Origin: Mytilus trossulus
Taxonomy: Eukaryota
NCBI RefSeq assembly: GCF_036588685.1
Contig: NC_086375.1
Coordinates: forward strand, 33,046,001-33,110,000
DNA: 64,000 nt
Direction: 5' to 3'
Every line of letters starts with the position of its first letter. Positions within the stretch are counted from its first letter, which is position 1. This document shows, one piece after another, positions 2,174 to 51,500 of the stretch. Under the pieces are notes generated by a model that was not told where the DNA came from, did no database searches, and saw only the letters and a program-made list of their open reading frames with translations. Position numbers and translations under genes: made by a program.

Positions 2174-4613
2174 TTATTTTCCGACAAATTTATTTGGATT
2201 AAACAGATCGTACTGAAGTCCTTTTCCCATTGACCCGGAAGATGATCCTGAATTTGTTCCACTCATGAACTGAGATGGGTTCATCATATTTGATTGAGAC
2301 ATCATCTGTTGATTCAGCTTATTTGGGTCAAAACTTCCTGTCGATCCACCACTGGAACTTCCACTCTGAGAGCTACTGCTTGACGATCCACCAGATCCGC
2401 CTGAACTTCCACTTTGAGAACTACTGCTTGATGAACCCCCAGATCCGCCTGAACTTCCACTTTGAGAGCTACTGCTTGATGAACCACCTGACGCTCCTGA
2501 ACTCATCTGTAAACTTCCAGAACCCATTTGCGAACCCCCTGAACCCATCTGTGAACTACCAGATCCACCACCTGAACTCATTTGTGATCCTCCAGAGCCC
2601 ATCTGTGAACTACCAGAACCCATCTGTGAACCACCTGAACTCGTTTGTGATCCACTGCTAGAACTTCCACTGGAGCCGCCATTCATAAACATCGACGGAT
2701 CTATCTTATTTTTTTCTGGACTATTAAGTGCATTTGGATCAAACCCTCCTGACCCACCACTTGAACCACTACTCATAGAACTACCGCCACTGCCCATGGA
2801 GCTACTACCGCCACTGCCCATAGAACTACTACCACCACTACCAATAGAACTGCTAACGCCACTGCCCATAGAACTACTACCGCCACTACCCATAGAACTA
2901 CTACCACCACTGCCAATAGAACTACCACCACTTCCCATAGAACTGCCAGTTGGTTTACTGTTGGCGATTTGTTTCAGATTCTGTTGTAACATTTGATTGT
3001 TCAAAGCTGAAGGATTGAATCCACCACTCATAGAACTGCTACCACTGCCCATGGAGCTACTACCGCCACTGCCCATAGAACTACTACCACCACTACCGCC
3101 ACTGCCCATAGAACTACTACCGCCACTACTAATAGAACTACTACCACCACTGCCAATAGAACTACCACCACTTCCCATAGAACTGCCTGTTGGTTTACTG
3201 TTGGCGATTTGTTTCAGATTCTGTTGTAACATTTGATTGTTCAAAGCTGAAGGATCGAATCCACCACTACCCGAAGACTTTCCACCTCCACTACTACCCG
3301 AAGACATTCCACCTCCACCAGAACTTTGTGATTGTGCTCCCCCACTTCCAGCACTTTGCTGTTGCTGAGGCATCTGACTGTTCATGGCATTTGGATTAAA
3401 TGTTCCTGTTGATCCGCCAGAACCTTGTGGTTGTGATCCACCAGAACTTTGTGATTGTGCCCCTCCACTTCCAGCACTTTGCTGTTGCTGAGGCATCTGA
3501 CTGTTCAGGGCATTCGGATTAAATATTCCTGTTGAACCACTTCCTGACGACTGTTGTGATCCACCAGAACTTTGCGGTTGTGCTCCACCGCCACTAGCAC
3601 TTTGCTGTTGCTGAGGAATATTACTGTTTAGGGCATTTGGGTCGAATGTTCCAGTTGCAGAACTACCAGACTTCTGTCCGTTCATGGTCTGTGGGGACTT
3701 TTGTTGTGATGTCATTGTATTTACAGCATTCGGGTCAAAAGTTGCACTTCCTCCACTTGACTGTTGTCCTGATGAACTACCAGATGACTGTTGTGAACTA
3801 CTTGATAATGCCTGACTTGTTTGTTGTGATTGCTGTTTAAATAAAGCATTTGGATCAAAAGTACCCATAGATCCACTACTTGACCCTCCTGATTGTCCAG
3901 AACCACCAGTAGATGCTACACTTCCGGAACCACCAGACGATGCTACACTTCCGGTACCCTTCAGGTACGATTGTACCGACTGCGACTGTTGTTGATACAG
4001 AGCATTTGGGTCGAAATTTCCGAGATTAGTTGCTCGCCTTGCATTTTCTGAAAGAAAGATATCATTGAATATGTTGACTTGTAATAAAGGGAACGGTTAC
4101 TTACTTCACTTATATTTACAATAGTCTTACAGAGTCTGAAAGGCACAGATTTTATAGTGTTACATAATCTGAAAACAAGTTTAATTCTATATAATATGAA
4201 TCCCCCCCTCCCAAAAAACCCCCCGATCCATTACATCATTGTGGGTATCTAGCACCCATAAAGTGTTTATACCACATATATCATAAACCATAGTTCCAAA
4301 TACACGTAGTTAAAAAAGCCGGTGTCTCGGTTTAGTGGAATGGTAACTACACCTGTGAGAAACTATATGTAAAACAACATCGGTTGTCTTTGTTTGGTTG
4401 GGTTTTTATCTCATTGACATTTACACTTATCCATCGTCTAAACTAGTAGACAATACAAGAAGCATTGGCTAATGGATCTCAAAGACATGACAAATTGACA
4501 AATCAGTGCTATTTTGTTTTGTCGAAGGCAAAAAAGTACAAAAACTTACCTCTATAAACTGGAGATCCATGAACGCAACATACTACCAGCAGTACAACTG
4601 TAGCCGTCTTCAT
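2174..4613 (-). CDS. Gene A: secreted Gly/Ser/Gln/Met-rich FDPN-motif protein, ~645 aa; exons 4613-4550 and 4047-2174
   Basis: Exon 1 reads MKTATVVLLVVCCVHGSPVYR (signal-like) with a G|GTAAGT donor. Acceptor TTCTTTCAG| at 4048 joins in frame to ORF 2174-3868 (ENARRATNLGNFDPNAL...). Many FDPN/FNPN motifs; ends FVGK-stop. Confidence 0.85.
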
Positions 4614-5998
4614 GACGATAAAAGAGGGTGAACAATTTAAAATTTGGTCTTAAATTATATTGACGAAACACCTGTCATCCCACAGAACCTTAATCTTGGA
4701 CGTATGACTTTAAACTAAAGATAACTGATAGATGACCTTTCAGGACATGAAGATATAATTTGGTTTACACAGCAACAATTTGATTCCAATTTTTCTTTTT
4801 ACATTCATCAAAATCCAGTACAGATATTTATTTCAAAATCATGACTCGGAAAGGAATGACGTATTGTTTTCACATTTGTCTATTGTTGAAAACCGTAAGT
4901 TGCATCTCTCGTTGCTTTTTGTGACTCGCGTGTTTTTTTAACTTGCTTTCTCTTTCACATTTATTTTTTTGTAAATACGACCATATCTTATTGATATAAA
5001 AAAGACTAGTTGTAAAAAGATTGAAGACAACTATTTTTAATTTCATTGACAAAGGAGGAGCGAAAGATACCAGAGGGACAGTCAAACTCAAAGATCGAAA
5101 ATAAACTGACAATGCCATGGCTTAAAAAGAAAAGACAAACAGACAAGTGTTTAAAAAACCCACTTTTATTAGATTAATTGTTTACTGAAAAGCTATAAAA
5201 GGAATAAGGGTTATACGTAGAGGAGGGAGCAACTCAACTACATCAAACATACATTTTATGCAGAATCGCAAAGAAAAACCACACAGTACAACAGAGCACA
5301 TCAACCACCAGCACCCGACTCCCTCATTGAAATCAGATACTAATATACAAACCAAGACAAACACACGCATGTTATAGAATTGGCACAAGTACATTATATA
5401 TGTGATTAGGTTAAAGCAGATTAACGGGTGCAAAAAACACCCTTTCACTTTCTATACCATCTGACATAAAATCAAAACACACAAATTAAAACCGTCACAA
5501 TGCAGCTACCATCAGGATGTTCAGTAGCATGAACAAGAAAATAAAACACGGCACATAATTTGGAATTCTGGGTCAAAATGTACTCGCTACTACAGGCAAT
5601 TAAGGTAGCTGCAGCTTTTGATATCTACTGAAGATACCAACTTGGGAGAGAATCTTACTTCTGAAATCAATCCATTAATTCAATATCCTTCAACTTCATA
5701 CTTTATTTTGACTTTTATCGCTTTTGATTCGAGCGTCACTGAAGAGTCCTTTGCAGATAAAATACGCGCTGCATGGTGTGCTTAATCATAAACTTGTTTA
5801 GTGTGTCAATCGAAGCAGGTGAATATGTTCCTATACATCTGTGGTTTACAATGGCCACTTGAACGCGAGTCTTGTTTAGTCCCTATGTTTAATTCATTAT
5901 GGTCTAATTTATGAATATTAGATATAAAATGTAGATATTGATCAATAATTAGACAAAATTTAGTATTTAGCTTTTTAATGACATACGATTGAACGATA

Positions 5999-6780
5999 TC
6001 ACTTAAATGTCCTTTTCCCGATAAACTTTCCGGGATCAATGAAGCTAAAACTGGAACTATTTCCACCAGAACTGAATGGATTGGTAAACTGTTGAGGAGT
6101 AAAATTTCCACCGGAAGTAGATGAACTGTTCCTAGATGAACCAGCACCACCGGTACCCCCGGTCCCTTTAAAGAACTGTGAAGGATCGATGAAACTTGGC
6201 ATGAAGTTTGGGTTGGTGTTGTTGCCATTCTGTTGAAATGAAGGATTCATGAATTGCTGTGGTTGAAAATTGGTTCCACTGGATGTAAAGTTTGGATTTA
6301 TAAACTGGTTTGGTGAAAGTTGTGGATTAGTGTTGGAAGTCTGTCTTTTTTCTGTAAATAAAACATGAAATACGTTGTTAGTTATTTTATTGGACCCTTT
6401 TTCCCTCTGATTATTTATAGCGATGTAAGGCATACAAAGTCGAAATCAACTGATTGACTATTATTATATCGCCTCTGTGCAGTCTTGTGCATGTATACGA
6501 ATCTACAACCAGTGTATGCGAATCTACAACCAGTGTTTATTGTTGTCAGTATAAATTTGAAAGTGTTGTATATCCGTACTTGAGTTTTTATACACCACAC
6601 ATACAAAAGAAACATTTATCCATAGTATATAGCTAGAGTCTCAGAAAAGCTCTAAAATATATGAAATTACGTCTCTACAAAATCAATAGAAAGTAGGAGT
6701 AAAAAAAAAATCCACCTACCTACAGATGGTCTGCCAATAACCACAGAAACCAAAAGAAGGAACATTACATAAGACGACAT
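5999..6780 (-). CDS. Gene B: small secreted Asn/Gln/Phe/Pro-rich FxNP-motif precursor, ~137 aa; exons 6780-6720 and 6351-5999
   Basis: Exon 1 reads MSSYVMFLLLVSVVIGRPSV with a G|GTAGGT donor. Acceptor TTTACAG| gives E-K-R-QTSNTNPQ... in the frame of ORF 5999-6433. Ends KFIGKRTFK. Confidence 0.85.
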
Positions 6781-12400: not shown

Positions 12401-12805
12401 ACGAAAACACGACCAATTACTGTAATAGTGTCATGCAATTGATCTATACATTAAAGGCGGTGAGAGAATACAATTGGGGTTTACAGAATAGAGAACAATT
12501 GGCCAAAACATAAGTAATAGAAAATATGGGTTCTATTTTTTTTTTAAACTTGATGAAATGCCCGCCCCAAGAAAAAAAAAGTATAAGTACATTGTTTACA
12601 GTTGAAAGGAATAATGTCCAAAATACAGTCATAATGTATCAACAGATTAGTTAAAAATATGTTTAAACATAAATTGTAGGTATAACTTATCATTAATAGT
12701 TCGTACCCAATAATTCTTGTAGGCTAGTCAGTCAATCGTCGGTGAAATCTAGTATGTTGTGAGAGCTGGTGATACATGTCCTTCAAAATACTAGTTCATA
12801 CAACA

Positions 12806-12957
12806 GTGAGCGAGCCAATTCTCATTCACCGAAAGTTCTCTTGTCCAATTGTAAAGCATCAGCCGCAATAAATTTCTAGTTGTAAGAGCGGGGCGATAAA
12901 TTTATTTCAGAATACGAGTTCATTCACCGGGGTGAGCGAGCCAATTCTCATTCACCA
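12806..12957 (-). repeat. Left internal copy (~1.2 units) of the 126-bp repeat, inverted relative to the right array
   Basis: GTGAGCGAGCCAATTCTCATTCACC occurs twice and is the reverse complement of the unit at 19114-19770. Confidence 0.85.
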
Positions 12958-13088
12958 AACGTTATCGTGCATGTATCAATAGAAATAAATAATAGCTGGC
13001 GAAGCAACATTTGCATTGCAAAAATCGAGTTGTTACAAAGAATATAAGCAAGTTGTTAGAGAAGACAGTTGAGAAAAAATCGTCAATT

Positions 13089-14460: not shown

Positions 14461-14514
14461 CTCGACTTTTTAGCGCGCTTTTTCACGTCACATGATTCTA
14501 GTACATGTACCACC

Positions 14515-14902
14515 ATGGCCACGTGTTCTAACTGTGATCGAGAATTTGAAAAACGACATGACAATAAAGGATACTTTAGGTTTTCTTTGGAAAAGCCAAC
14601 AACCTCTGGTGGGGTAGCAAGAGAAGAGTTGTCAGCATTAACGGGTGTTCCGTTTACTCCTGTATCTAACAAACGTCAAGGTCAATTTTTGTGTCCATCA
14701 TGCTGGTCAAACCTTAATGACACTGTACGATATAAATCATCTTTACATGAACTTTGGGGAAATACTCAGGCCAATTCCTACATTGGAGGGAAGCGTGGCT
14801 CAGATGGAATAAAACAGTCTTCCACAGTAAAGAAACCAAGATTTACAAGTACCCCGTTGAAGGTATTTTTTTTATCCTTATATATATATGAAATTATCTC
14901 TC

Positions 14903-14964
<62 letters not shown>

Positions 14965-18235: not shown

Positions 18236-18366
18236 CAGCTAATTTTCAGTTGATAATATTTTTTTCAACGGTCAATTTTGACGAGGTGTATTATTTTACA
18301 TTGTTACAGTTTATTGATTAAAGGCGGGAAACTTTATCACGTGGTATAGGAACATCGTGTACAAAA

Positions 18367-19077: not shown

Positions 19078-19113
19078 TTTTCAAGGGAAATATTTCTAAT
19101 AACATTTCATACG

Positions 19114-20434: not shown

Positions 20435-20657
20435 GGGACGACATCAAAAGTTCAATGTACGAAAAAAGAACTTAATTCACATAGTTTTTTCACTGACACC
20501 CCCCTCTTAACTTAATTTGGGAAAAAATTATTTACCGATAGGGATATATGTAAAAATCGATTTTACATATACAAAACTTGCAGAATTTTACCCCCCCCCC
20601 CCAAACTATTTGATTTAAGTTTTTTTTTATCCTACATCGATCTTTTGATGTCGTCCC
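20435..20657. mobile_element. PIF/Harbinger-like MITE nested in the Academ element
   Basis: TIRs GGGACGACATCAAAAG / CTTTTGATGTCGTCCC; TTA duplicated at 20432-20434 and 20658-20660. Confidence 0.8.
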
Positions 20658-21389: not shown

Positions 21390-22939
21390 TTATTTCTTTC
21401 CAAAGCTATTTGGATCAAAGTTTGCAGATGGAGCCTTGTTCGGATCGAATGTGCCTGATCCCATACTATTTGGAGAGAATGATCCTGCACCCATAGAGTT
21501 TGGATTGAAACTCCCGGATGGGACACTGTTCGGATTAAAACTTCCAGCTCCAAGACTACTTGGTTTGAAGGATCCAGCTCCTAATTTATTTGGGTCAAAT
21601 GTTCCAGCTCCAGAGTTTGGACTAAACTTGCCAGCTGCCATCTTATTAGGATCGAAACTTGCTGTGCCATTTGTATTGAACATGCTCAATGATGCTAAAA
21701 CAGAAAAAAAAATTTGATTCAGTATATTATGGGTACTATAAAGTGATCAGTTTCGATTTATTTTGAGAAAAAAATAACATACGACAGCTACATGTAGTTA
21801 GGATATTTGTACTTCAATTTAAGCGAGTAAGAACTGATTGTCTCATATTGAGTTTCCTGGCGACAAATAACTTCGTAAGGTGCAGAATTTGTCGGATATA
21901 TCTGAAATTGATGCCCTCAAATCTTTAAATGAAACATTGTATTTCAGTTATACACATCTGGCTTTCGTCTTTTCCAAATTTTGTCTTAGGAATTATGTTG
22001 ATTTCAATAATAAGAAAAAACTTAAACGTCACACCAAATGATAAAACAAGTACTTAAAATTACTGAACTCCAAGATAAGTTCAAAAGAGTGATCGCTTTT
22101 CCGTTGATTGACGAATACCTCTACCTCTCGTTTTAGTCATAAGGGAGCCACCATTTGATTTTTATGGGGGGGGGGGGCTAGGATGAAATTTGAAAAAAAT
22201 AGGCAGGACAGGAGTTTTGAGTTAAAAAAAAAGGCAGGATGAGACACTTGCAAAAGAAAAAAAGTCAGGATGACAATTAATTTAAAAAAAGTCAGGATAA
22301 ACTAAAAAAAAAAAAAGCAGGACCGGATAGAGTGAAAAATAAAAAGGCAGGACAGAGATTACAACTAAAAAAAAATGCAGGACAAAATTTTTCATCCTAG
22401 CCCCCCCCCCCCCCCCCCCATAAAAATCAAATGGTAGCTCCCTAAGTGTAACCCATATCTTATGTTGAACAAACCACGATAATCGTTTCAGCAGTGTAAA
22501 TGTTGGTTTGTTATACTAGTATTATTGAGTATTTTGCATTACTTGCAATTTTTTTTAACGATTAGAGACTCTTTTAAAATGGAAAGGTACTTATCTATCA
22601 AATGTTAAACAAATTTAGAAGAAATAAGTACTAAAAAAACTTATCAATGCATATAGCCTATTGTAAAACAACATACAGATAGACCACCTTATTATATATA
22701 TTACTTGTAAAATAACCGAAATCAACCTTGTGCTTAAATTCCGTTATGAATTTTTCTCAGAGTTCAGTTTTTTTGCGATTTTACTCTTTTTACATTCGAA
22801 AAAATAAAAAATAACTTATGAATTTGAACCTATCAACATTTTCTATTGTTATATTTGTGAATAGAATAATAAAATAAGATATATTCTTACCACTATAGCA
22901 TGTTGGAATTAAAACAGTTAAAAATATTAACAAATTCAT
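21390..22939 (-). CDS. Gene C: small secreted ~decapeptide-repeat protein (consensus GAGSFNPNSM), ~117 aa; exons 22939-22891 and 21694-21390
   Basis: Exon 1 reads MNLLIFLTVLIPTCYS with a G|GTAAGA donor. Acceptor TTTTAG| is in frame with ORF 21390-21689. Nine F-x-P units; ends SFGKK-stop. Confidence 0.87.
22143..22442. mobile_element. PIF/Harbinger-like MITE in the gene C intron
   Basis: ~45-50 bp TIRs (GGGAGCCACCATTTGATTTTTATG..G-run..CTAGGATGAAA), TAA on both sides, internal AAAAAGGCAGGA repeats. Confidence 0.8.
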
Positions 22940-24716: not shown

Positions 24717-25619
24717 TTATTTTCCAAAACTATTGAGCTTGTTTGGATCAAAGGTCCCACTTCCGGTACCACCATTAAGTTTATTCGGGTCAAAGGTTCC
24801 AGTTCCACTTCCACCACTACCAAAACCAGTTCCGGAACCAAAACCTCCTGTTCCACTTCCACTTCCTGTACCGAAACCACTTCCTCCAAATCCAGTTCCG
24901 CTTCCGAAATTGTTTACTTTATTAGGATCGAATGTTTCAGTTGTCCCAGATGGAGCAACAGTCGATGCAGCAAATGTGGTCATGGAGCCGGCAAATGTTG
25001 ACATGGAGCCGAATCCAGCTCCTCCAAAGTTCTGGTTCAAAGCGTTTGGATTAAAACTACCACCTGTGCCAGATCCGAATCCACCACTGCCGGCCGCGAA
25101 ACCACCAGTACCAAAGTCCTTGTTTAGAGCATTCGGGTCAAATGTTCCATCTGAAATGGAACATATTTATACATTAAATGATAAACCTTCTCAAAATCTT
25201 TTTCACATACCATATTAGTATTCCCATCTCAAAGTAGGAATATCAAGCCATAATTTTATATCATATATATTCATGTCATGTATTCCAAATAAATTTATGA
25301 CCGGTAAGAAAATTGATGATGAATCAAGTATCTTTTGCTCCGTTGCACTGAATTATATTATATTCACTATAATATACCTGGTATATTATTACTTGAATTT
25401 CCAAATCTTATATTAATGACATTTATATCAAGTGTATAGTTAAATATGGATTTGCTTAATGACATAATGTTGTAGAAACTCAAGGCTAGTATTTTCACAA
25501 AAGTCTTATTCTATTCAAACTTTGAATTCTTTTCATAATTTTGATTTGATATGCTTACCAGATAGTGGAGCCGACAGACATGCTGGTAAGAGACAAAGAA
25601 GAGCTAAACAACCCTTCAT
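24717..25619 (-). CDS. Gene D: secreted Gly/Phe/Thr-rich FDPN-motif protein, ~164 aa; exons 25619-25559 and 25150-24717
   Basis: Exon 1 reads MKGCLALLCLLPACLSAPLS with a G|GTAAGC donor. Acceptor TTTCAG| gives DGTFDPNALNKDFG... in frame with ORF 24717-25040. Ends SFGK-stop. Confidence 0.87.
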
Positions 25620-33010: not shown

Positions 33011-36000
33011 ATGACAGTTTTTACCATCTTTGTTGGAATTCTAGTATCAGGTATGCTTTCATTTTTTTCAACACAAGATAATTTTGATGAAACCACTGTG
33101 GTGTTTTCCTGAATTACCAGAACAATATTCATTATACTGGTAAATAATAATTTATAAAAACTTAAAACTCATTACCACTTTAAGGTTACTTTAATACAAT
33201 ACTGGTTTACGGCATTCGTAACGATCTATATTTTGTGTATTTATTATTGTTCCAAGAGAACAACTGTGTATACTTTCCGACCGAGCTGTGAGACCTCTCT
33301 GTTTGCAGAAGTTTTTGCTGATGAAATTGTGCTAGAAATATCGAATGCTGAACCGTTGTCGGAAGGGGCCACGCTCCCGACATTATCTCCAGCATCAGTC
33401 GTTAAAAAATAACATAAAGAGAAAATGCCGAATGTTTTACGAGATGTGGTATGATTGCAAATAGGACAACTACCTAACATAGTTCAAATGAAGGGTATTA
33501 AATCAACTACGGGTAGATCAATACGAGGCTTCAACAATGATCATAACCCATAAAACTTTGTAGTTCAAATGTGTCAGACATGACAAAACGTGAAACATTT
33601 TATTCGAGAAAAAAAGCATGGTCTGATTAACGACGACACAGCAATAGAAAAACAAATATTACAGACAACAACCAATGATACCCACTGTATAACTCGCAAC
33701 ATATTTTTCTGTTGCTGTCTCATCCAATCCTTTTTTGTGCTAATTTGATAGCAGAACTTCCAAGTCAATAGCATTGTTTTTTTTTACTTAAGGTTTAATT
33801 AACTGTCGATCAACCAATAGGCCATACGAATTAATGCAGTCATTTGATAAGTTTGATTTTAAATAAATTCAAATTGCAAAATCGATTGAGCAGTATAAAC
33901 GCCTCACCAAACAATTCCTTTTAAAGGTTTAAAGAAAAGTAAACATGTCGGGCAACTCATTGGTTGTAACTAAAAAAAAAAAAATAGACAAAACGCCGTA
34001 CGATTTTAAAAACTTTATTTTAATGTCTTTTGCAGGATGTTATTGTTTTTCACTACCAGGTCTGCAAAATGTCCAGACAGATGATAATTTCACTAAAACT
34101 TTTGGAATTATACCAGGAAAAAACATATATAAAAAGACAGATCCAAATCATTCAATCGACACAGAACAACTTGGGGAACATGTACTCTCGTCCCAGGAAA
34201 AAGTTCCCACTTCCGTCTCAAATCATGGTAGTCTTGCAACAACGCTGAATCAACTATCTGGTATGTCGGCACTTCAGTTGCTGAAGATTCTAGGAGTACA
34301 ACTTGGAAGTAATGCACCTCTCAACATCAATACAAACGCCATTATCCATCGACAGCCACAAAACAATGTTCAAAAGCAGCAATATTATACAGGAGAACCA
34401 TTGAAACCAACAATGAAAACACTTTCAAACTATGGACAAAAAACCGGAAGTTTTATGCCAATGCTGGACAAACAGATCAAAGGTTATGTTTCTACTGAAA
34501 CTGATAACAACATTTTAAGTAAACCACAGCAAATGAGCAATGCTGGAAAGTCAAATACTCAGCAACAAGTGAGTCCAGTTTTCATGATGACGTCGGGAAT
34601 GGGTGGAATAAGCTTCCCTGATACGTCTTCAATACAACAGCCATCTGGTTCTACTCATGAAGATAATAAAGCTAAATTGTTTGACCCTGATGCTCTGATG
34701 CAAGAAATGATGAGCTCCTCTTCATCCTCACTAGGTGCTGGGAAATATATGGTAAAACAGAATGTTTCTCCACAAAATTGGGCACCTAATCAACAGAACC
34801 ATATGCAAACGAATACCAAAAACAGTCCAGGCACGTTTAATTCTATGCATGGACAAACATCTATCAACTTCAACCCCGATTCATTCAACAACGTAAAAAT
34901 GAATTTTCAACCAGATGCACTCTTGCTATTTGTTAATAAAGAGACACCACATATAAGTAACAAACTTACATATAATCCTGATATACTTAACAACTACCAT
35001 GGAAAGTTTAAACCTGGACAAATGTTCCAAGTTGAAGATATGAATACGCCGCTACCACCTGTACATCAAAGTTTATTCAATGCCGACACTTTAAACAAAA
35101 AGTTGATGAGCAGTGTCAAAAATTCAGAGGACCCAAATCCTAACAGTGAAAACACAGCAACTTCATTGGAGTCCAAAATTGTCCCGCAACCGTCATTGAA
35201 GAAAATGTCAGGCTTTGTACCTGGCTTACTTTTTCCTGGGTTTAAACCTGATAATGATGAGCGAGGGAATCACTTTTCGGAATATGACACCAACTTTGTA
35301 GAAAGAGCAGAGGACATTAAGAAAAGCACCAAGCCTAGATATGCTTTTGTAGATATGTTATCAGATTTACCAGCAGACCCTGACTATTCAGTTAATCAGG
35401 GAAACCAAACAAATCAAACTGCAGTTGCACCAACTGGCCAATCAGAGACAACAATTACAGGCAGTATGGACACAACAACTCAAGGGACTACTATAGTGCC
35501 CACAACTTCAACTGATATGCATGAAAACCATAGTGAGCCCGGTAAATTTATGCCTGCTCAGTCGAACAGCCCTCAAAATGGGTTTGTTCCTGGTTCTTTG
35601 ACAGGAGATGGCCGAACATTACAAATGATGGTAAATAAAGGAATGTATAACCCTAACGTGGTCAATCAGCAGGCTTTCGTAATGAATAACAATCAGAATA
35701 CAGGATCGTCAAATGTCAACAATAACACAACGCATCAGACGTCGAATAGTTTCGGGATGACGTTTAATTTTAATCCTTCGTCAGTTAACCAAGCAAAAAT
35801 GAGTTTCAACACTAATCAGCAAATTGGAATGGATGGTTCGAGTGGGTCGACGTCAAACAACTACAATACATTTTATGATCCAAATAAAGTAAATCAAAAT
35901 TCATATATCAACCCATTCGACAAGGCCCAGACGAATATGAACAACATGTCAACAGGGCAGTATGATAATTCACAGTTCTTAGGAAATTTTGACGCTAACC

Positions 36001-36662
36001 AGGTAAACAGGGGGATTATGGGAAATTCAAGAAATAGTACGCAAAATAGTATGCATTCTGGGTTTGGTGGACAATTTAACCCAACAGAAGTAAATAAAGC
36101 ATATTTTAATCCAAATGTGGTAAATAAAGAGAGAATGAACTTTAACCCTTCTAAAATGTTGGAATCTAATGCTGGCTATGACAAGAAAACAGCCGAAAGT
36201 TATACATTTGATCCGAATAAAGTCAATGATATACATGTGAATTTTATTCCTCCTTTTCTTCAAGACAATAAAAACTCAAGTACAGGGAACAGTTCAGGTT
36301 CTGGATTTATCCCTGGTCTTCTGTCTGGAGGTAAAGATAATAGTGGTGTGTTTGATCCGAGTAAAATGGAGGCTGGCATGTTGTTTAATCCAAACGCAAT
36401 GATGAATACGAACAAAAATACGACAGAAAATAGAGGCAACTCAGATAAAAGTCAAACGAATATGATGTTTAATCCTTCAGCTATGATCGGTAACATGAAG
36501 GGTTTGATCTCGGGAGCAAGTTTTGATCCAAATGCAGTAAACAAAATTAACATGAATTTCAGTCCTAATGAAATGATGAAACAAGTCGCTGGAAGCGACG
36601 AAGGGACAACCAGGACCAATAATTCTGTAATTGGTTATGGAAACGATGAAAAAGTTAAATAA
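33011..36662 (+). CDS. Gene E: large secreted Asn/Ser/Met/Thr-rich protein with many F/Y-[ND]-P-[NSD] motifs, ~888 aa; exons 33011-33050 and 34036-36662
   Basis: Exon 1 reads MTVFTIFVGILVS with a G|GTATG donor. Acceptor TTTTGCAG| continues GCYCFSLP in the frame of ORF 33945-36662, completing a signal peptide. TATA-like TATAAG at ~32926. Confidence 0.85.
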
Positions 36663-40128: not shown

Positions 40129-42913
40129 ATGGCGTGGACATCGGTGATATTAGCGACTTTATTGGTCAGCCATGCATTCGCCATTAGTGGTAAGTTTATA
40201 TTTTTGGAAGGAAATTCATGTTGATCGTAAACTGAAGGGAATCCCAAAAAGTCTTTAAACAAATAATAAAAATAATAAAAACGGTTCATTGTTTCTAATA
40301 GATTTTTGTGACTATTCCCTTATCTTTGAAATTAATTCAATTTAATACGATTTCACATGTACATGATTTAACAAAAAATTCACATAACTTCTTTATTTCA
40401 CAATCTATAAGTGAAGATTCATCACTATAAATGAAGTCGTAGTTGCATTTGCTTAGTTCTTAACTATATAATTTACTATTTTGAATTTTGAATTTTAATT
40501 GTTCTAATGAATTTTTATTCCTTTTTTCAATGAGAAATTTTCGTATATTTTTTTTTCTTTTTTTTCAAGTTTTAGATGAAAATAGGTTCAAATGACACAT
40601 AAACAACAGAAACGGGTTCGGATAAAAGAACATTGTGACATATTGATCAGAATTCGGTTATTTCGGTTTTATAGATTCGAATTAGTTTATCAAAAGTTCA
40701 AATTATTGAATACGGAAATATGCCATAACAAATTAAATCCATAAGAACCGAATTAACAAAAATTGTAATACATAATTAATAAATTTATAATGAGACTCAG
40801 TGAGATTACATGGTAAAAGCAGTTTAAAAATGCAATAAACAATACATATATACGATATGTTGACGAATGACAAATGACAAATGCGTTTTTAAATAGCAAA
40901 ATACAAAAATTATAAAACATGTATAGTACTAGACAAACTTTAACCATGGATGTATTATATTTCATTTTATTTTTATGCTTTTAATCACTATAATACTAGT
41001 ACGAAAAGACTGATTTTGATTATCAAATAAATTATTTCTTAGAACATATCTATAAGTGTAAACATTGACCCTAAAATTCCCCGAAATCGCGTGATTTTTC
41101 ACTTGTTTATACAAGTTTTTTGGTTTCTTCTAGTATTTTTTCAGGTGACGGAAGACAAAAAATATCTAGAAGATGGAAATTTGAATTAGAGTTAAAATGT
41201 CAGGTCAGGTGGTAATCTTGCAAATTCTAATTAAAGCTTTAAGTTTATGCCCTTCATTTTTATTTTGTACGTACCTTCAAAATGACTAGACCTTGCTAAA
41301 AAACATAGAAGGATACATTCTTTATTACAGAAATGTTATCAATATTTTCATTTCTTTTCAGTGCGACAAGCAAACAGCACATCCGGTGGGACATCAAGTG
41401 GGGGTTCTGGAGGAGTGACTCAAACTGGTGGAGGTTCTGGTGGGGTGACACCAAGCAGTGGAGGTTCCGGTGGAGTTACTCAGAGCGGTGGAGGTTCCGG
41501 TGGAGTTACCCAGAGCGGTGGCAGTTCTGGTGGTACATCAGGAGGTTCCAGTGGTAGCTCCAGTGGATCAGCATCACAGAATATACAACCTCCTCAGTTT
41601 TTGTTAAATCCATCACAGTTTCTTGGAGGCGGGAATCAGCAAAGGTATTTAGTTACGGAGATTTTCTTTACAGATTAGAAGTTGCAAGAACACATGAAAA
41701 TAGTGCATTTGATGAAGAACATAATGACTTGCATGTTGTCATATTTTCTCAAATCAAAATGTATAGTCTAAACTTTTATGGTGCCACAATTGAAGCAGAA
41801 TCTGCTTAACTCGCCGGAGCACAGGATTTAACCCCTGTATTTGGTGGGGTCGTGTTTCTCAGTCTTTAGTTTTCTGTGTTTTGTTTACTTTTTTTGTCTT
41901 TCTGTGTTTTTTCTCTTTTTGAAAAGCATAGTCAGTTTAGTTTTTACTAATGAGTTTGAATAACCCTTCGATATCTTTCGCCACTCATTAAAAGATTTGA
42001 AAGAACTGAATAAGAACGATCATTCATTTTACTATTGTATTTCAGTCCTAGTGGAGGAGGATCTAGCAGCAGTGGCAGTGGTTCTGGTGGTAGTTCCGGT
42101 GGAAGCAGTAGCAGTTCTGGTGGTGGTAGCAGCAGTGGTGGTGCCCAAATGCCAAATTTTGACCCAAACAAAGTCAACCAAATACATGCCAGTTTTCTAG
42201 ATCCATCAAAGCTACAACTAGGATCTGGGGGAGGAGGGGGCAGTGGTTTTAATCCTGACCAAGTCAACAGCATGTTGTTCAATTTCCTCAACCCTAGTCA
42301 AATGACAGCAGGGAGACGTATGTATTCCATCTTTGTTAATGTTTTTGTAAATTTTATACCAAAATAATAACCAGTTACACATCCAATTTCTGATTCAATA
42401 TTATACGGTAGCTGTTATGCGTAATTTACTGTGCTATTTGATTTTATCTATTAGGTAGACGACAGACAAGTCAAACTAGTTCCGGCGGAAGTAGTGGTGG
42501 AAGTTCAAGCAGCAGTGGAAGTCAGCCACCAAACTTTGACCCTAATAAGGTAAACCAGGTACAATCCAGTATGTTAGATCCATCAAAATCACAGCTTGGT
42601 TCCGGTGGTGGCGGCGGAGCTATGTTCAACCCGGACCAGTTCAACACCATGAAGTTTAATTTCTTTAACCCACAAGCACAGACTAGCGGTGGTGGTGGCG
42701 GCGGCGGCAGTGGAGGCAGTGGAAGCAGTAGCGGAGGTAGTCAGCCACCAAAGTTTGACGCTAATAAGGTTAATCAATTACAAGCCAACATGTTGGACCC
42801 ATCCTCATCAAAATTGGGTCAAAGTGGAGGAAGCGCCGGTGGATTTGATCCAGACCAATTTAACTCCAAAACATTCAACTTCTTTAATCCACAAAACCAA
42901 TTAGGAAAGAGAG
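40129..42913 (+). CDS. Gene F: secreted Gly/Ser-rich FDPNKVNQ-module polyprotein; exons 40129-40189, 41362-41644, 42046-42317 and 42455-42913 (final exon unresolved)
   Basis: Exon 1 reads MAWTSVILATLLVSHAFAIS with a G|GTAAGT donor. All junctions are GT-AG and phase-consistent (1, 2, 1). Three copies of the module PNFDPNKVNQ..LDPS..LG..GG.FNPDQ.N...FNF.NP; internal G-RRRR-Q and QLGKR. Confidence 0.82.
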
Positions 42914-45900: not shown

Positions 45901-48500
45901 GATCTTTTTTTAATGATAGTTTTCTTTTAAACTAGATACTGCGTTATTATGCTAAGATTTTGCTATCTCTCATGAGCGGCGTTGGTCATGGTTTCGATCC
46001 TTTATAAATTATGATTGTAATTCTTTTTTTTGTCTTTATGCTCTTGTTTAAATAATGGAACATTTCCATCTTCTTAAATTTTGATTATATATTAAAAAAA
46101 TGGTGGGTTTTTTTTGAGACCATATAATATAGTCATCATAAATACCAGGATTTGTATGCCAGAAGCACGTTTCGTCTACAAAAGACTCATGTTGAAGCTT
46201 GAGTGAAAAAAAAGTTAAAAAAAAAAAAGCCGAATTAAGAACGAAGTTGAAGAGCATTTAGGGCAAAAATTCCGAAATGTTTTGTCAAATACATCTAATG
46301 TAATCTATACCTGCGGTAGACAAACCTTAGGATATGAAAGATTCAAAGTGTTATAAACAGGTTGATTCATGTCAACACAGACTAGTAGGCTGGCTACCGT
46401 GAAACACTGGGAGAAGAAACTTCCACTAGCAGTGACATTGACGATGGAAACACTCATCATAGAGATTTGACAGTAATAAAATTTTGAACGTCAGGCGCAT
46501 AAGGGACGTTATATTGTTAAGAGAGCTATCGTAAAAGTTTCCTTCTTATAGTTACGGTCTCGCTCAACCTTCTAATATGCGGGGGACGATGTATTCTGCA
46601 GAACCATATCATTAGATGATTCCTCATTTGGGTGAAGGTGCAATTCATCGATGATTCTTGACAAATTCAACTTCCGAGTGTCAAAACAAAAACAAATAAA
46701 TGACCAATGCTAAGGCTCATAAAGTTGCTGCTGCTACTACAGCTCTTCCATAAAAGCATGCAAAAATAACTTTGATCAATTTGCTTGCTACATGTATGTT
46801 TGCTTAGATGTATGCAAACAATAGGTAGGCGGAGTTTTAGTCTGTTTTATATATACTGAGATTTGATTGGACAATAAAAATTGACATGAAGCCCGACAAT
46901 ACAATGGCATGAAAAAACCCCAAAAAACGAGAGAAGACAATAGCAATTTACATAACACTACACTGAGTAACACGAGCCTCCCTGAAACAAGGAATAATCC
47001 TTAGGTGTTCCGAAAGGGTCAATAGCAATTGCTTCAAATGCGACCGCTCATGACCCCAAAAATTGTATAAAAAGGACTTATATCATGTATTTTAAACAAA
47101 ATATCGACTGGGCGACAACTGTTATACATTTCATTTGCTACTATAATTTCAACAAATGAAAATTAAACGTCTTGGTTAATTCCAAATTTTACAACAATTG
47201 TGTCCCAAGAAGATTCTTCAAACGTTTGGCGAATGTCAAAAGCGCAGTTGAAATTGTGCCTGGTAAAAGCTGTAAATATAATTTACATTGTATAGACTTG
47301 GTTATAATTCGAACGAGTATAGACCGATTCTTGTAGTTATTGTTGTGTGGAAATGTAGTTTTACATAGTAGCTAAGTAATATGAGTAGATTTCATGAAAC
47401 ATGGATTTTTCTCAAATCCAAGATGGGACTTTTTTGTTCTTTGCAGGAGACAATACCTCCATATTGTTCACTTGCGCAATTTGTTGACCTTCATTTTCAA
47501 ATAAAATTGAGAATGGAAATGGGGAATGTGTCAAAGTGCCTTTGATTTATCCGATGATATTATTGATCGGATGTTCAACCATCGATATCACTTTACTCCT
47601 ATCAACTTCTTTGTGCTTCCTATGTTCATTTTGGAAATCAAAGCCTTATTCTTGCTAAATTCTCTTAAAATATAAGCCATTTTCTTGGTTATAATCTAGT
47701 TCTTTATCTCGATCGAAACCTATATCAAGATTATGTGACTGGTATTTGAAATAGATTTGAAAATTCTTAACGCTAACAAATCGGGAATAATCAATTACAC
47801 AAACTCATCAACAATAAAAATAGATTGAAAGGCATAACCTAAACATCATACATCATATCCCGCTTACTCCAGGGAGACATAAACGTGATTTTCGGGTAAA
47901 TTGTGTAATAGGTAACTAACAAAATCTTTATTTGGGAAAGCAGCATTTAAGCATGAATTATGAACTGCAATATGTACACACCGAAGAAAGTTGATTGATG
48001 TTATGTTATAATAGTATCATTAACTTATCACTCAGAAATGGGATGTTGACAATGGGAAAATTATGACCACCGTTCATCAAAGTATTCTTGATTTTGAGTT
48101 TAATATAGGACATAACTGATTGAAAGACACATTTGATATACCAGAAAATAAAATTGAGGTGTTTTAATAGTATTTTTGTATGAATATTATCATTCAAAAA
48201 ACATTACAGATTTTTTGATATATTGCGTTTTAAACGCTTTAGAAAAAGTTCTAAACTAACATGTATGCTGAATATTAGAAAAGTCAGTAAAACGATATAT
48301 CAGTGAGAAACAACCATTATAAGCACAGATCACAAGCTTATTTTGCTAGAGGAGTCTTATTGTTTTATTATTATCAAACCATACAGAAGTCGGTTCATGA
48401 TGGCTATTATTGTACAGTCACGCAGTGAAATACGTCTATCCTTATCTTATACTGATAAAATAATTATGTTTACCTTTATTTAGGACTAAATACATTTATC

Positions 48501-51500
48501 ATGGCACCGTTAAATACAATATTTACATTTTTGTGTATGGTCAGTTTGACCAAAACTGACCGAAATGGTGAGTCTGAATTTGTCACCTTCAACAATTTCG
48601 CGATGAAATTCTAGACAAAAATCTTATTTTACGTATTTATAATTTATGTAAATTGGTTATCGAGAAAACAAGCGTCACGGATGATATACCAAAGCAAAAC
48701 CACTATTCAGCTCCCCAACACTCTTATGAATAATCAGATCTCGAAGTTTTTGATTACGTGCTCACAAAGTGTATTAATTTAAGATTTATAATCTTTTTTA
48801 TCACTTGTCAATATGATAAAGACAATATTCATATTATTTATAAAAAAAAGAAAAAAAAAAAAAAAAAAAAAGAAGAAGAAGAGAAGGGAGATGCCATACA
48901 ATTGTAATCAACACCATAAGTCGACTTAAGACAGGAATCTCACCGTCAAATTAAAGAAAGAAAAAAAAACCGAACAGATAAACATTTCTACAAAAGACAT
49001 AATCCATAGACCAATCATATTCTTATATGAATAAATCGTGTGAAACGTAGGTATTTTCTATTTGTTTATAGGGCTGCCTCCAAATTGTTTAAAAAAGTCA
49101 ATACCTTGTAATTTTTTTTTTATAAATAACATACTTGTTGAAGAGAAGAAAACATTATTTTGGTTTTCCAAAAATGAATATTTAATTTACATGTTTTGGA
49201 AGTAGACAACTTTCACGCTTTGTAAACAAAGCTTTATAAAAGATTATACATATGTATAAATGGCGTAAGAACGATATAAATTCAACAAATTAGTGTTACA
49301 ATTATATATTTTGTTCCTGATACATATATTGACATTTACATGAATATTATCTAGTCCATGTTATTCGATACTCTTATATATATATATTATTTGTTGATGT
49401 ATTTTTTACAGTGCGACAAAGTTTCAACCCTAATTCAATGATGGGAAGTTTTCTTGGTGGATCATCGTCGTCATCTTCTTTGTATGGAAGCTTCAACCCA
49501 AATAAGATGATGTCACAATACACAGGCGGGGGTTCTAGTGGTAGCATGTTTAACCCTAATGCTATGATGGGAGGAGGTCAACAACCGCAGCAACCTGCAA
49601 ACAGTGGTCAAAGTTCACAGAAAAGTCAATCATCCCAATCTACAAATAGTCCTCAACAATCAGGAGGTAGTCAGTCATCTGGAACTGGAACGTTTGACCC
49701 GAATGCTCAGATGTCATCGGGTGGTTCCGGTGGCACCTCTGGTGGAAATCAATTTGGAGGCATGTCTCAGTCATCAGGGGGATCCGGTGGCGCCTCTGGA
49801 GGAAGTCAATTTGGAGGCATGTCTCAGTCATCAGGTGGGTCTAGTGGAAGTATGTTCAATCCCAATGCCATGATGGGTGGTCAGCAACAACCAATGAACA
49901 GTGGGCAAAAATCACAACAGAGTCAATCTTCCCAGTCGACAAATAGTCCTGCACAATCAAGTCAGTCATCTGGAACTGGTATGTTTAACCCAAATGCGCA
50001 GATGTCATCGGGTGGATCTGGCGGAACTTCCGGTGGCGGTGGAATGTCGTTCAATCCGAATCAGATGACGTCTGGTGGAGCACAACAAATGAGTGGTAGT
50101 GGTGGTGGTGGTGGTGGTAGCAGTTCAAACACAATACCAAAGTACAACCCAAACAATGCTGTAAATACTGGCGCCAAATATGACCCTAATGCTGCAAACA
50201 GTGGAATGAGTGGTTCTTCTGGTGGAGCAAAACCATCTTTTGCCAACGGTATGGGGTTAAATGCAAAACAACAAACGCCTGGTGGACAACAGACTACGAG
50301 TCAACCAAGCCAACAACCCGGATCACAATCCGCGTCTAGTTTTGGTCAAGCATCTGGTCAGCAACAACAATCGGCAGCATCTAGCTTTGGACAAGCTTCA
50401 GGTCAACCATCACAGTCTTCAGCATCAAGTTTTGGTCAAGCTTCAGGTCAACAGCCACAATCGGGTTCTGGAAGTCAACAGCCTCAATCTGGCTCCGGAA
50501 GTCAACAGCCTCAATCTGGCTCTGGTAGTCAGCAGCCTCAATCAAATTGTGGACAGCAAGGCTCTTTTGACCCAGTAGCCGCCAATACAGGAGGAACTTC
50601 TGGTTTTAACCCTCTTAATCCACTTTTAGGTATGATTGGTGTCCATGAGCAGATAATTGTGCAAATTATAAAACTACTCCAAGATCAGTTAAATTAAAAA
50701 AAAAATATGCAAACTTTTCAGTAAATATTTGAAAATTTAATTCCTCTAAAGAAAAATTTGTATTTCAACACATTAAGCTGTAATTAATGCTGGAACACAA
50801 ATGTATCTCATAAACGTTAACTTTCACTGAATAATATATAAAGATAGAAATATTTGTTCGATAAATGCATTGTTTTTTCATCTATTTACACTCATCTGAT
50901 ACATTTCGCAAACTTTAACTTATTTAGTTGCTTTTCTTATATTTTATAGGAGGAAATACTTTGAGTAAAATCATGGGACCGAACACAGGATGTGGTAAAT
51001 ATCTTCATTAACACTTGCTGATGATACATACTGGTAGTTCATCTTATTTCCACCTTATTTACCCACAACTCTAAATATTTTCAAAGTCATCTAAAATGTC
51101 AGTATTTGTCTGACTGTTTCCTCAGAATTTCACAGCAGGGCCATTTGCTAAATTCTTCCAGGCTGGAATAAAATGCAAAACCTTTTATATTCATAAATAA
51201 CAGATCATTTTGAGATAATTGTATTATTTAAAAGATTTCGGTCTTCAGTATAAAGGTTCCGTGTTAAGGTATAACTGGTTAACTCAAGAATAGTAATACA
51301 GATACCAGTCAGAATTATCACTATTGTTGTTATTAGATTTAAACTATGAATGTTACAGGTAAAAGTAATGGTGGTTTTGATCCTGGATCTGTCAATATGC
51401 AACAAGCCCAACTGGGAACCAGCTTAAACATGTTTGGCGGAGCTAAAGGAGGAGACCCAAGTAAAATGGATGCAAGTTCGTTAATGGGTGGATCCTCTGG

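What the first reader, a model, noticed from the sequence alone, without database searches (positions are those of the whole stretch)
2174..49420. Prohormone-style processing code on structural-looking proteins: basic-site/Gln starts and Gly-Lys/Arg amidation ends
Seen: C-termini A ...FV-GK*, B ...KFI-GKR-TFK*, C ...SF-GKK*, D ...SF-GK*, and F ...QL-GKR at the end of its last resolved exon. N-termini after the signal peptide are A RR-A, B KR-Q, F R-Q and G R-Q. Established: convertase cleavage, carboxypeptidase trimming and PAM convert X-G-K/R into X-amide, and an exposed N-terminal Gln can cyclise to pyroglutamate. Inference: these ~100-600 aa disordered chains mature in regulated secretory granules with one or both ends charge-neutralised, which is unusual for bulk structural proteins.
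Basis: partly seen in the sequence, partly recalled or inferred. Interest (0 to 1): 0.82.

Follow-up and report, generated by a model that had tools for sequence, protein, structure and literature searches.

The report
Mussel disordered proteins with amidation-type ends
A cluster of mussel genes encodes long, floppy secreted proteins whose ends carry the cutting and capping signals normally seen on small hormones, and the tail signal is kept in oysters, pearl oysters and zebra mussels, so it is probably functional though not yet shown chemically.

Summary
The window (Mytilus trossulus) holds a tandem cluster, unique in the genome, of six or seven genes. They encode secreted, cysteine-free, Ser/Gly/Gln-rich proteins built on F-[D/N]-P-N repeats. 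All have a first exon that encodes the signal peptide and ends in a split Gly codon.

Genes A to D end ...FVGK*, ...FIGKRTFK*, ...SFGKK* and ...SFGK*. F has internal ...TA-G-RRRR-Q... (across a splice junction) and ...QL-G-KR at an exon end.

RNA contigs confirm the A and B introns, and RefSeq confirms B.

New here:
- Homologues in Crassostrea, Magallana, Saccostrea, Pinctada, Dreissena and another mytilid all end hydrophobic-Gly-(K/R)1-3. Lys and Arg interchange and Gly is invariant. Chance per protein is 0.1-0.4%.
- In oysters the terminal KK are the only basic residues of the mature chain.
- 11 of 12 Arg in about 1,830 residues sit within four residues of an exon-piece end, at or beside the predicted cleavage sites.

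This favours convertase, carboxypeptidase and PAM processing to amidated chains of 90-620 residues.

The pyroglutamate half is weaker. B's Gln is Leu in M. galloprovincialis and M. edulis. F's and G's Gln follow a single Arg.

The granule origin and a structural role are untested, and no mass spectrometry exists. The family is uncharacterised.

The parts
2174..4047 (-). Gene A exon 2. It reads (E)NARR|ATNLGNFDPN ... LFNPNKFVGK*, about 624 codons. RR is encoded at 4034-4039, the terminal V-G-K at 2177-2185 and the stop at 2174-2176.
   Evidence: ORF and translation. Acceptor read. The RNA-contig joint 4047->4550 appears in three runs, and contigs cover 2107-2420 across the stop.
4550..4613 (-). 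Gene A exon 1, coding part: MKTATVVLLVVCCVHGSPVYR plus the split codon G|gtaagt (phase 1). It encodes the signal peptide and the start of a short propeptide.
   Evidence: Sequence; joint in RNA contigs.
5999..6351 (-). Gene B exon 2. It reads (E)KR|QTSNTNPQ ... FIDPGKFIGKRTFK*. KR is at 6344-6349, Gln at 6341-6343 and G-K-R at 6011-6019.
   Evidence: Identical to RefSeq XP_063427143. Joint 6351->6720.
6720..6780 (-). Gene B exon 1, coding part: MSSYVMFLLLVSVVIGRPSV plus G|gtaggt (phase 1).
21390..21694 (-). Gene C exon 2. It reads (A)SLSMFNTNGTASFDPNK ... NFDPNSFGKK*, with ten-residue SF(N/D)PNSxGxG repeats.
   Evidence: The orthologue cluster P0016 and P0034-P0042 ends ...NPSAFGKK or ...NPSAYGKK.
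22891..22939 (-). Predicted gene C exon 1: MNLLIFLTVLIPTCYS plus G|gtaaga (phase 1). This is a prediction only, with no RNA support.
   Evidence: Scan for phase-1 signal-peptide exons.
24717..25150 (-). Gene D exon 2. It reads (D)GTFDPNALNKDFG ... GTFDPNKLNSFGK*. It has no Arg and no dibasic site.
   Evidence: It was the query that found the homologues in other bivalves.
25559..25619 (-). Gene D exon 1: MKGCLALLCLLPACLSAPLS plus G|gtaagc (phase 1).
33011..36662 (+). Gene E. Predicted exon 1 is 33011-33050 (MTVFTIFVGILVS plus G|gtatgc). Exon 2 is 34036-36662. It is a family member of about 890 aa, rich in Asn and Lys, with F(D/N)P(N/S/D) repeats. It ends ...GYGNDEKVK* and carries no Gly-basic end and no basic-Gln start.
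   Evidence: The splice sites were read from sequence only.
40129..40189 (+). Gene F exon 1: MAWTSVILATLLVSHAFAIS plus G|gtaagt (phase 1).
41362..41644 (+). Gene F exon 2. It reads (V)R|QANSTSGG ... FLLNPSQFLGGGNQQ. Its only Arg is residue 1 of the in-frame piece.
42046..42317 (+). Gene F exon 3. It reads (S)PSGGGSS ... FNFLNPSQMTAGR plus C|gtatgt. Its only Arg is the last residue.
42455..42913 (+). Gene F exon 4. It reads (R)RRQTSQTSSGG ... FNFFNPQNQLGKR plus G|gtataa. Joined to exon 3 it gives ...MTA-G-RRRR-Q.... Arg occurs only at its first two and last positions.
49412..50626 (+). 'Gene G' large exon. It reads (V)R|QSFNPNSMM ... GFNPLNPLL plus G|gtatga, 404 in-frame residues with a single Arg at position 1. 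It is probably the next exon of F, which would give ...QL-G-KRVR-Q...; this is an inference.
   Evidence: No signal-peptide exon was found at 43000-49410. The only similarity to F intron 1/exon 2 is the acceptor plus TGCGACAA.
51359..51732 (+). Last exon of G (or of F/G). It reads (G)KSNGGFDPGS ... GGTSGTSRGGSKSFDLLHF*. AATAAA lies at 51952. It has no Gly-basic end.

Best explanation
The window holds a bivalve-specific family of secreted, intrinsically disordered proteins, six genes if F and G are one. The chains consist of F-[D/N]-P-N 'sticker' motifs spaced by Ser/Gly/Gln (and in places Met) runs. They have no Cys or Trp and hardly any Tyr or His.

Each chain or module ends in a conserved block, F-(D/N)-P-x(2-5)-hydrophobic-Gly-(Lys/Arg)1-4. 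A, B and F/G also carry basic sites just before the mature start.

Proposed mechanism:
1. The signal peptide is removed (inferred from sequence).
2. A subtilisin-like convertase cuts after RR/KR/RRRR/KR(VR). This removes 7-10-residue propeptides in A and B, and splits F/G into up to three chains (inferred).
3. A carboxypeptidase E/D-type enzyme strips the terminal Lys/Arg (inferred).
4. Peptidylglycine alpha-amidating monooxygenase converts X-Gly to X-amide, giving Phe-, Val-, Ile-, Leu- or Ala-amide ends (inferred).
5. Where Gln is exposed (F/G modules, and B of M. trossulus) it may cyclise to pyroglutamate (weakly supported).

The likely benefit is chains whose C-terminal carboxylate is neutralised and resists carboxypeptidases (both ends where Gln also cyclises), useful for long unfolded proteins released into sea water or a matrix. 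The Phe motifs would provide weak cohesive contacts for a gel or coacervate. Tissue and material are unknown.

Shown: the gene models of A and B, the motifs, their deep conservation, the confinement of Arg to the boundaries, and predicted disorder. Inferred: every enzymatic step and the material role.
For: Family and locus:
- The codon pattern for FDPNK(L/V/M)N occurs 8 times in the 1.3 Gb genome, 7 of them in this window. The 30 kb flanks on each side hold no further member.
- All genes share a phase-1 first exon ending in G.

Gene models:
- RNA-contig joints confirm the A and B introns, and contigs read through A's stop.
- RefSeq XP_063427143 equals B.

Conservation of the end:
- C. virginica ...FDPNSFGKK, Magallana gigas/angulata ...FDPNAFGKK, Saccostrea ...FDPNAFGKK, Pinctada imbricata ...FDPNSFGRK, Dreissena polymorpha ...STLFGRR, an unnamed species ...MSFGKRR, and mytilid C orthologues ...SAFGKK or ...SAYGKK.
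- B keeps GKR in M. galloprovincialis and M. edulis.
- No difference is listed in A's last 16 codons in any of the three runs that cover them (X5, X6, X12); 62 lesser differences went unlisted.
- Gly is kept after F, V, I, A, L and Y, so it is not merely the 'FG' of the repeat.

Statistics:
- Chance of the end motif is 0.1-0.4% per protein.
- Oyster mature chains have 2 basic residues in total, both at the terminus.
- 11 of 12 Arg lie at exon-piece ends, and 0 of 200,000 permutations reach that.
- In A-D, F and G, runs of two or more basic residues occur only at the predicted sites.

Disorder: an AlphaFold2 model of the oyster member has pLDDT 57 and pTM 0.17.

Precedent in Mytilus: the gill myticalins are predicted to be processed by a KR site, CPE and PAM (PMC5577615). 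Copper-monooxygenase C-domain exons are present in the genome.
Against: - No mass-spectrometric or other chemical evidence for an amide or pyro-Glu end exists.
- E, and the final end of G (...DLLHF*), lack the signal, so it is not universal in the family.
- B's Gln is Leu in two sister species.
- The F and G Gln follow a single Arg in a poor convertase context (ISVR).
- The Gly of the C/D-type ends is also part of the recurrent 'FG' of the repeat, so part of the motif comes free with the repeat.
- Lys-Lys ends could stay on the protein.
- PAM itself was not singled out among the 54 Cu2_monoox_C matches, and co-expression is unknown.
- The F-to-G splice and the first exons of C and E are predictions without RNA support.
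Confidence: 0.6

Rival explanations
1. The terminal Lys/Arg residues are not removed. They form a functional cationic tail on otherwise acidic or neutral chains, for example for docking on an anionic polymer or mineral, or as Lys donors for transglutaminase cross-links to the many Gln residues. The Gly is simply the repeat's own 'FG'.
For: In C, D and the oyster, pearl-oyster and zebra-mussel proteins, the terminal F-G continues the internal N-x-F-G-S-G-G pattern. A and G are very Gln-rich (66 and 63 Gln) and carry scattered Lys, a composition that would suit Gln-Lys cross-linking (own knowledge, by analogy with loricrin and involucrin).
Against: Dreissena ends GRR with no Lys, and Pinctada ends GRK, so Lys itself is not required. 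Gly is retained after V, I, A and L, where there is no 'FG' context (A, B and the F modules). The same Gly-basic block occurs internally in F, directly before a new module and across a splice junction, where a 'tail' makes no sense. B has three more residues after GKR.
Confidence: 0.17
2. Proteolytic processing happens but capping does not. Convertases cut the propeptides and the F/G polyprotein, as Pif is cut into Pif 97 and Pif 80, and carboxypeptidase may trim the basic residues. The chains then end in free Gly, and Gln stays uncyclised.
For: Confinement of Arg and of basic runs to module boundaries shows only cleavage-type sites. Post-translational cleavage of a bivalve shell-matrix precursor is documented (PMC5379566).
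Against: Cleavage alone does not explain an invariant Gly immediately before the basic residues in about a dozen sequences spanning Pteriomorphia and Imparidentia. It also does not explain why proteins that end at the stop codon with GK/GKK, where no cut is needed, keep the motif.
Confidence: 0.13
3. The ends are an accident of low-complexity composition and shared ancestry of paralogues, and have no function.
For: A-D are paralogues, so four similar ends count as one event. Gly is 14-29% of these chains.
Against: Per-protein chance is 0.1-0.4%. The motif is retained between lineages whose remaining sequence is only about 40-55% identical and full of indels. K/R turnover with fixed Gly indicates selection on the class of residue. 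The position of Arg is far from random.
Confidence: 0.04

Closest known systems
Neuropeptide and prohormone precursors (convertase / carboxypeptidase E / PAM / glutaminyl cyclase pathway)
   Same: Both have a signal peptide, di- or multibasic cleavage sites, X-Gly-basic ends with a hydrophobic X, and Gln directly after a basic site. F has several modules in one precursor.
   Different: The products would be chains of 90-620 residues of low-complexity, disordered sequence, not peptides of 3-40 residues. There are no internal dibasic sites that would release short peptides. No homology to any known neuropeptide family was found (Pfam none).
Myticalins, the linear gill antimicrobial peptides of Mytilus (PMC5577615)
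   Same: Both occur in the same genus and are non-neuronal secreted products with a predicted KR cleavage site, CPE trimming and PAM amidation, and a phase-1 intron.
   Different: Myticalins are 23-42-residue, Pro/Arg/Tyr-rich, strongly cationic peptides followed by a long anionic extension. The proteins here are long, nearly uncharged or acidic, avoid Arg, and mostly end right at the signal.
Arthropod glycine-rich antimicrobial proteins with reported C-terminal amidation (armadillidin; acanthoscurrin, 130-132 aa, 72% Gly; PMC5031766 and own knowledge)
   Same: Both are Gly/Phe-rich repetitive (GGGF-type) secreted chains of up to about 130 residues, with a Gly-basic precursor end.
   Different: Those proteins are cationic (pI 10-12) and rich in His or Arg. 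The C/D-type proteins here have no Arg or His, and the oyster members have no basic residue left after trimming. No sequence homology was detected.
Bivalve low-complexity matrix proteins: Met-, Gly- and Gln-rich shell and ligament proteins (abductin, LMP, NU-5, MRNP34; PMC7591529) and the cleaved Pif precursor (PMC5379566)
   Same: Both are bivalve-restricted, secreted and repetitive, with Gly/Met/Gln-rich composition (G and A). Pif shows precursor cleavage at basic sites.
   Different: No homology to them was found. The defining F-[D/N]-P-N motif and the Gly-basic end have not been described for them in the texts read. No proteomic link places this family in shell, ligament or byssus.

Membership tests
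PAM substrates (C-terminally amidated secretory products) | Entry into the secretory pathway through an N-terminal signal peptide | tested here: met
   Hydrophobic leaders with small residues at -3/-1 are present in A, B, D and F, and are predicted for C and E. B equals the RefSeq model. No dedicated signal-peptide predictor was available.
PAM substrates (C-terminally amidated secretory products) | X-Gly followed by a stop, or by 1-4 Lys/Arg, at the end of the product | tested here: met
   A has VGK*, B has IGKR-TFK*, C has FGKK*, D has FGK*, and F has AGRRRR and LGKR.
PAM substrates (C-terminally amidated secretory products) | Gly and the basic class of residue conserved in orthologues while other positions drift | tested here: met
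   The ends are GKK, GRK, GRR, GKRR and GK across Mytilus, three oyster genera, Pinctada, Dreissena and an unnamed species.
PAM substrates (C-terminally amidated secretory products) | An alpha-amide demonstrated on the mature product | not testable with these tools
   This needs LC-MS/MS or Edman/C-terminal chemistry.
PAM substrates (C-terminally amidated secretory products) | PAM, carboxypeptidase and convertase expressed in the producing cells | tested here: inconclusive
   There are 54 exon-level matches to Cu2_monoox_C (PF03712) in the genome, but PAM was not distinguished from DBH-like paralogues. The tissue of expression is unknown because run metadata are coded.
N-terminal pyroglutamate proteins | Gln (or Glu) exposed as the first residue after cleavage, and conserved | tested here: inconclusive
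   F/G modules start VR-Q, RRRR-Q and KRVR-Q. Dreissena may start with Q straight after the signal peptide. B's Gln is Leu in M. galloprovincialis and M. edulis. A exposes Ala. C, D and the oyster proteins start with Ala.
Classical multi-copy neuropeptide precursors | Several short peptides, each flanked by dibasic sites | tested here: not met
   There are no internal multibasic sites in A (623 aa), C, D or G's 404-aa exon. Basic runs occur only at chain or module ends.
Cationic glycine-rich antimicrobial peptides | Net positive charge and high pI of the mature chain | tested here: not met
   D has K5 against D5+E1. Oyster mature chains have no basic residue apart from the terminal KK.
Myticalins | Conserved myticalin signal peptide, a Pro/Arg/Tyr-rich cationic core, and an anionic C-terminal extension | tested here: not met
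   The signal peptides differ, Arg is almost absent from the chains, and there is no anionic extension.
Abductin and ligament Met/Gly-rich proteins | GGFGGMGGGX-type decapeptide repeats, or detectable homology | tested here: inconclusive
   A phmmer search of D against 1.84 billion representatives gave only FDPN-family hits plus one bacterial low-complexity hit. GGFGG-like runs exist in D and in the oyster members, but no abductin sequence was available for direct comparison.

The most novel reading that the evidence does not exclude
A family at least as old as the common ancestor of mussels, oysters, pearl oysters and zebra mussels uses the neuroendocrine processing machinery (convertase, carboxypeptidase, PAM and, in F/G, glutaminyl cyclase) to end-cap long intrinsically disordered matrix or gel proteins. 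That would give the longest amidated polypeptides known (up to about 620 residues). F/G would be a polyprotein cut into up to three chains, the first two with both pyroGlu and amide ends. End-capping would be a general way to protect and charge-neutralise secreted low-complexity materials in sea water.
Probability: 0.4. Interest if true: 0.72.

Novelty: new variant of a known kind. Interest (0 to 1): 0.58.

Why it matters
Amidation and pyroglutamate formation are regarded as features of small hormones, toxins and antimicrobial peptides. A conserved amidation-type signal on secreted disordered proteins of 90-620 residues would extend that chemistry to material-like proteins.

It would also give a concrete handle on an uncharacterised, bivalve-wide protein family. 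RefSeq currently mislabels members as 'keratin', 'hnRNP A1' or 'glycoprotein hormone receptor'.

The prediction is directly testable by mass spectrometry. For biomaterials research, end-capped, Cys- and Tyr-free, Phe-sticker proteins would be a different design from the DOPA-based mussel proteins.

Tried and rejected
**Family and structure-type searches that gave nothing useful**
- Pfam gave nothing for A-G. C gave two sub-threshold repeat hits, PMG and Decapeptide.
- HMMER of C against the own genome found only C itself, so the paralogues are too diverged or too low in complexity. A codon pattern worked instead.
- ESM Atlas gave no usable hit for F exon 4.

- The search for homologous proteins with G's 404-aa exon found nothing. 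This says little, because low-complexity words flooded the candidate list and a longer F/G protein would fall outside the length window.
Orthologous loci of A, F and G in other Mytilus genomes could therefore not be fetched.
- Two metagenome scans, with F exon 4 and with A exon 2, found no relatives.

**Literature**
- Searches for 'FDPN' and for every accession of the family found no paper.
- Searches on byssus or foot plus amidation gave only myticalin, CRP-I and neuropeptide papers.

**Ideas considered and rejected**
- A separate promoter and signal-peptide exon for G: none was found.
- A classical neuropeptide precursor, a cationic Gly-rich antimicrobial peptide, a myticalin: see the membership tests.
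- GPI or ER-retention signals: there is no hydrophobic tail, and these are luminal proteins.

- Spliced (joined) protein models were not built or searched.

Full report
**What the window is**

The window is animal DNA with about 33% G+C. Earlier notes of this scan call the genome Mytilus trossulus. That fits here: the protein of gene B is identical to RefSeq XP_063427143, 'uncharacterized protein LOC134710686 [Mytilus trossulus]'. The window is contig C3:33046001-33110000 of the assembly.

**The genes**

Six-frame ORFs and a scan for F-[D/N]-P-[N/D/S] pick out these members: A (2174-4613, minus), B (5999-6780, minus), C (21390-22939, minus), D (24717-25619, minus), E (33011-36662, plus), F (40129-42913, plus) and G (49412-51732, plus).

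The shared architecture, read from the sequence, is as follows.
- The first exon encodes most or all of a signal peptide.
- That exon ends with the first base (G) of a split codon in front of GTAAG/GTAGG/GTATG.
- The next exon starts after a pyrimidine-rich acceptor.

For A and B the introns (4048-4549 and 6352-6719) are confirmed by joints with GT..AG ends in contigs of RNA-type runs from two coded organisms. Contigs also run unspliced from the last repeat of A through the stop codon into the 3' UTR. The first exons of C and E, and the exon chain of F and G, rest on sequence only.

**A single local family**

The codon pattern for F-D-P-N-K-(L/V/M)-N occurs eight times in the 1.3 Gb genome. 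Seven of these are in this window. The eighth, on another contig, is an isolated chance match. The 30 kb on either side of the window hold no further member. Pfam recognises nothing in the seven ORFs or exon pieces scanned.

**Check of the observation**

- A ...LFNPNKFVGK*
- B ...FIDPGKFIGKRTFK*
- C ...NFDPNSFGKK*
- D ...TFDPNKLNSFGK*
- F exon 4 ...FFNPQNQLGKR in front of a donor site

These ends align as one block, F-(D/N)-P-x(2-5)-hydrophobic-Gly-basic. They are therefore one inherited feature of the paralogues, not four independent events.

At the N-termini:
- A reads signal|SPVYRENARR|ATNLGNFDPN.
- B reads signal|RPSVEKR|QTSN. Both have short propeptides ending in a dibasic site.
- C, D and E have no basic site.
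- F reads signal|ISVR|QANS.
- G's exon starts VRQSFNPN.

The exon 3/4 junction of F reads ...MTA-G-R|RRR-Q-TSQ....

**Are F and G one gene?**

I think probably yes, at about 0.6, by inference.
- No signal-peptide exon was found in the 6.5 kb before G's exon.
- The only similarity between that region and F's first intron and exon is the acceptor plus TGCGACAA, which encodes (V)RQ.
- The phases fit.
- F exon 4 has no convincing poly(A) signal nearby, whereas G's last exon has AATAAA 220 bases after its stop.
- The junction would read ...QL-G-KRVR-Q..., a parallel to ...TA-G-RRRR-Q....

Against this, the intron would be much longer than the others, and there is no RNA evidence. If F and G are joined, the precursor has three modules. 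The last one ends ...SKSFDLLHF*, without the signal.

**Is it more than chance?**

Composition-preserving shuffles give a hydrophobic-Gly-basic end with probability 0.001-0.004 per protein.

Arg is almost excluded from the chains. Of 12 Arg in about 1,830 residues of A, B, C, D, F and G, 11 lie within four residues of an exon-piece end, at or beside the predicted cleavage sites. The expected share is 5%, and none of 200,000 permutations reached the observed count. In A-D, F and G, runs of two or more basic residues occur only at those sites. Lys, by contrast, is scattered through the repeats (FDPNK).

A phmmer search of D's exon against 1.84 billion representative proteins and a profile search found homologues in several bivalves:

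| Source | C-terminal end | Accession |
|---|---|---|
| Crassostrea virginica | ...GFDPNSFGKK | XP_022329287 |
| Magallana gigas / angulata | ...GFDPNAFGKK | XP_011413369 / XP_052699888 |
| Saccostrea echinata / cucullata | ...NFDPNAFGKK | XP_061174655 / XP_062619619 |
| Pinctada imbricata | ...GFDPNSFGRK | KAK3089162 |
| Dreissena polymorpha | ...NSTLFGRR | KAH3845421 |
| Unnamed species (Logan assembly) | ...NTMSFGKRR | none |
| Mytilid orthologues of C | ...NPSAFGKK or ...NPSAYGKK | none |

Every complete C-terminus carries the motif. Gly is invariant, the preceding residue is hydrophobic, and the basic residues change in kind and number. The oyster mature chains contain no other Lys or Arg at all. 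The rest of these proteins is only 40-55% identical and full of indels.

B keeps GKR in M. galloprovincialis and M. edulis. No difference is listed in A's last 16 codons in any of the three runs that cover them (X5, X6, X12), although 62 lesser differences were not listed. The K/R turnover with fixed Gly is what a carboxypeptidase/PAM signal predicts (established knowledge of the pathway).

The N-terminal half does less well. B's Gln is Leu in both sister species. The distant homologues start directly after the signal peptide with Ala-Pro-Phe-Asp-Pro-Asn, or with Gln in Dreissena.

**Nature of the proteins**

They have no Cys or Trp, hardly any Tyr or His, and very few acidic or basic residues apart from the Asp and Lys of the repeat. 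Phe sits at regular positions.

An AlphaFold2 model of the oyster member built on the small family alignment is disordered (pLDDT 57, pTM 0.17), with single helical turns at D-P-N-A.

The tissue is unknown because run metadata are coded. Contigs matching A and B also occur in a poly(A) 'aquatic metagenome' metatranscriptome. That hints at expression in planktonic larvae, but it is only a hint.

No paper was found for the family by motif or by any accession.

**Mechanism I commit to**

Confidence is about 0.6 for the C-terminal part. After signal-peptide removal:
1. A subtilisin-like convertase cuts after RR/KR/RRRR/KR(VR).
2. A carboxypeptidase removes the basic residues.
3. PAM turns X-Gly into X-amide.
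4. Exposed Gln in F/G may cyclise.

The result is long, unfolded chains whose C-terminal carboxylate is neutralised and blocked, and in the F/G modules possibly both ends. A plausible benefit is resistance to exopeptidases and removal of end charges in a Phe-sticker/Ser-Gly-Gln-spacer material. All enzymatic steps are inferred. Whether the route is the regulated one is open, because PAM, furin and carboxypeptidase D also work in the constitutive route (established knowledge).

**Comparison with what is known**

The logic is that of prohormone processing. In Mytilus the same CPE/PAM prediction has been made for the gill myticalins (PMC5577615). Cleavage of a structural bivalve precursor is known for Pif (PMC5379566). 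Gly-rich proteins of up to about 130 residues, reported to have amidated ends, exist among arthropod antimicrobial peptides (PMC5031766, and own knowledge).

The differences here are the size and the uncharged, disordered nature of the products, the absence of releasable short peptides, and the new repeat family. Hence my rating of 'new variant of a known kind'.

**Limits**
- PAM itself was not identified among the many Cu2_monoox_C matches.

Noticed in passing
window 12000-21400: A large DNA-transposon-like insert lies directly 3' of gene C's stop codon. It contains a RecQ/DEAD-type helicase ORF (13225-14460, minus; DEAD and Helicase_C domains), a 977-aa ORF with DUF6589 and PHD-like Cys/His motifs (15302-18235, plus) and a 236-aa ORF (18367-19077).
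   Followed up: partly
own genome, e.g. G000:C2:99.31-99.46 Mb, C2:56.0-57.7 Mb, C2:25.38-25.41 Mb: The Pfam family Cu2_monoox_C (the C-terminal domain of copper type II ascorbate-dependent monooxygenases such as PAM and DBH) gives 54 exon-level matches, many in tandem arrays on contig C2. This is a strong expansion of that enzyme family in the mussel genome.
   Followed up: no
window 2154-3042 and 6174-6333: Contigs of a poly(A) metatranscriptome labelled 'aquatic metagenome' match gene A (about 96% identity) and gene B (160 bases, no difference). Seawater and other metatranscriptomes also hold parts. This may mean the genes are expressed in planktonic mussel larvae.
   Followed up: no
window 2520-2564: A 21-base (7-codon) insertion/deletion polymorphism lies in the Ser/Gly repeat of gene A. 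It differs between runs: 21 bases are left out at 2520 in two runs and put in behind 2564 in another.
   Followed up: no
window 5050-5146 and 5662-5832: Two short stretches between genes A and B have very high summed contig depth (up to about 1,070) with many loose ends. They behave like pieces of a high-copy transcribed repeat, not part of either gene.
   Followed up: no
P0004/P0010, P0013, P0014 (oyster homologues): RefSeq and UniRef names for the oyster members are misleading low-complexity artefacts: 'probable glycoprotein hormone G-protein coupled receptor', 'heterogeneous nuclear ribonucleoprotein A1' and 'keratin, type II cytoskeletal'.
   Followed up: yes
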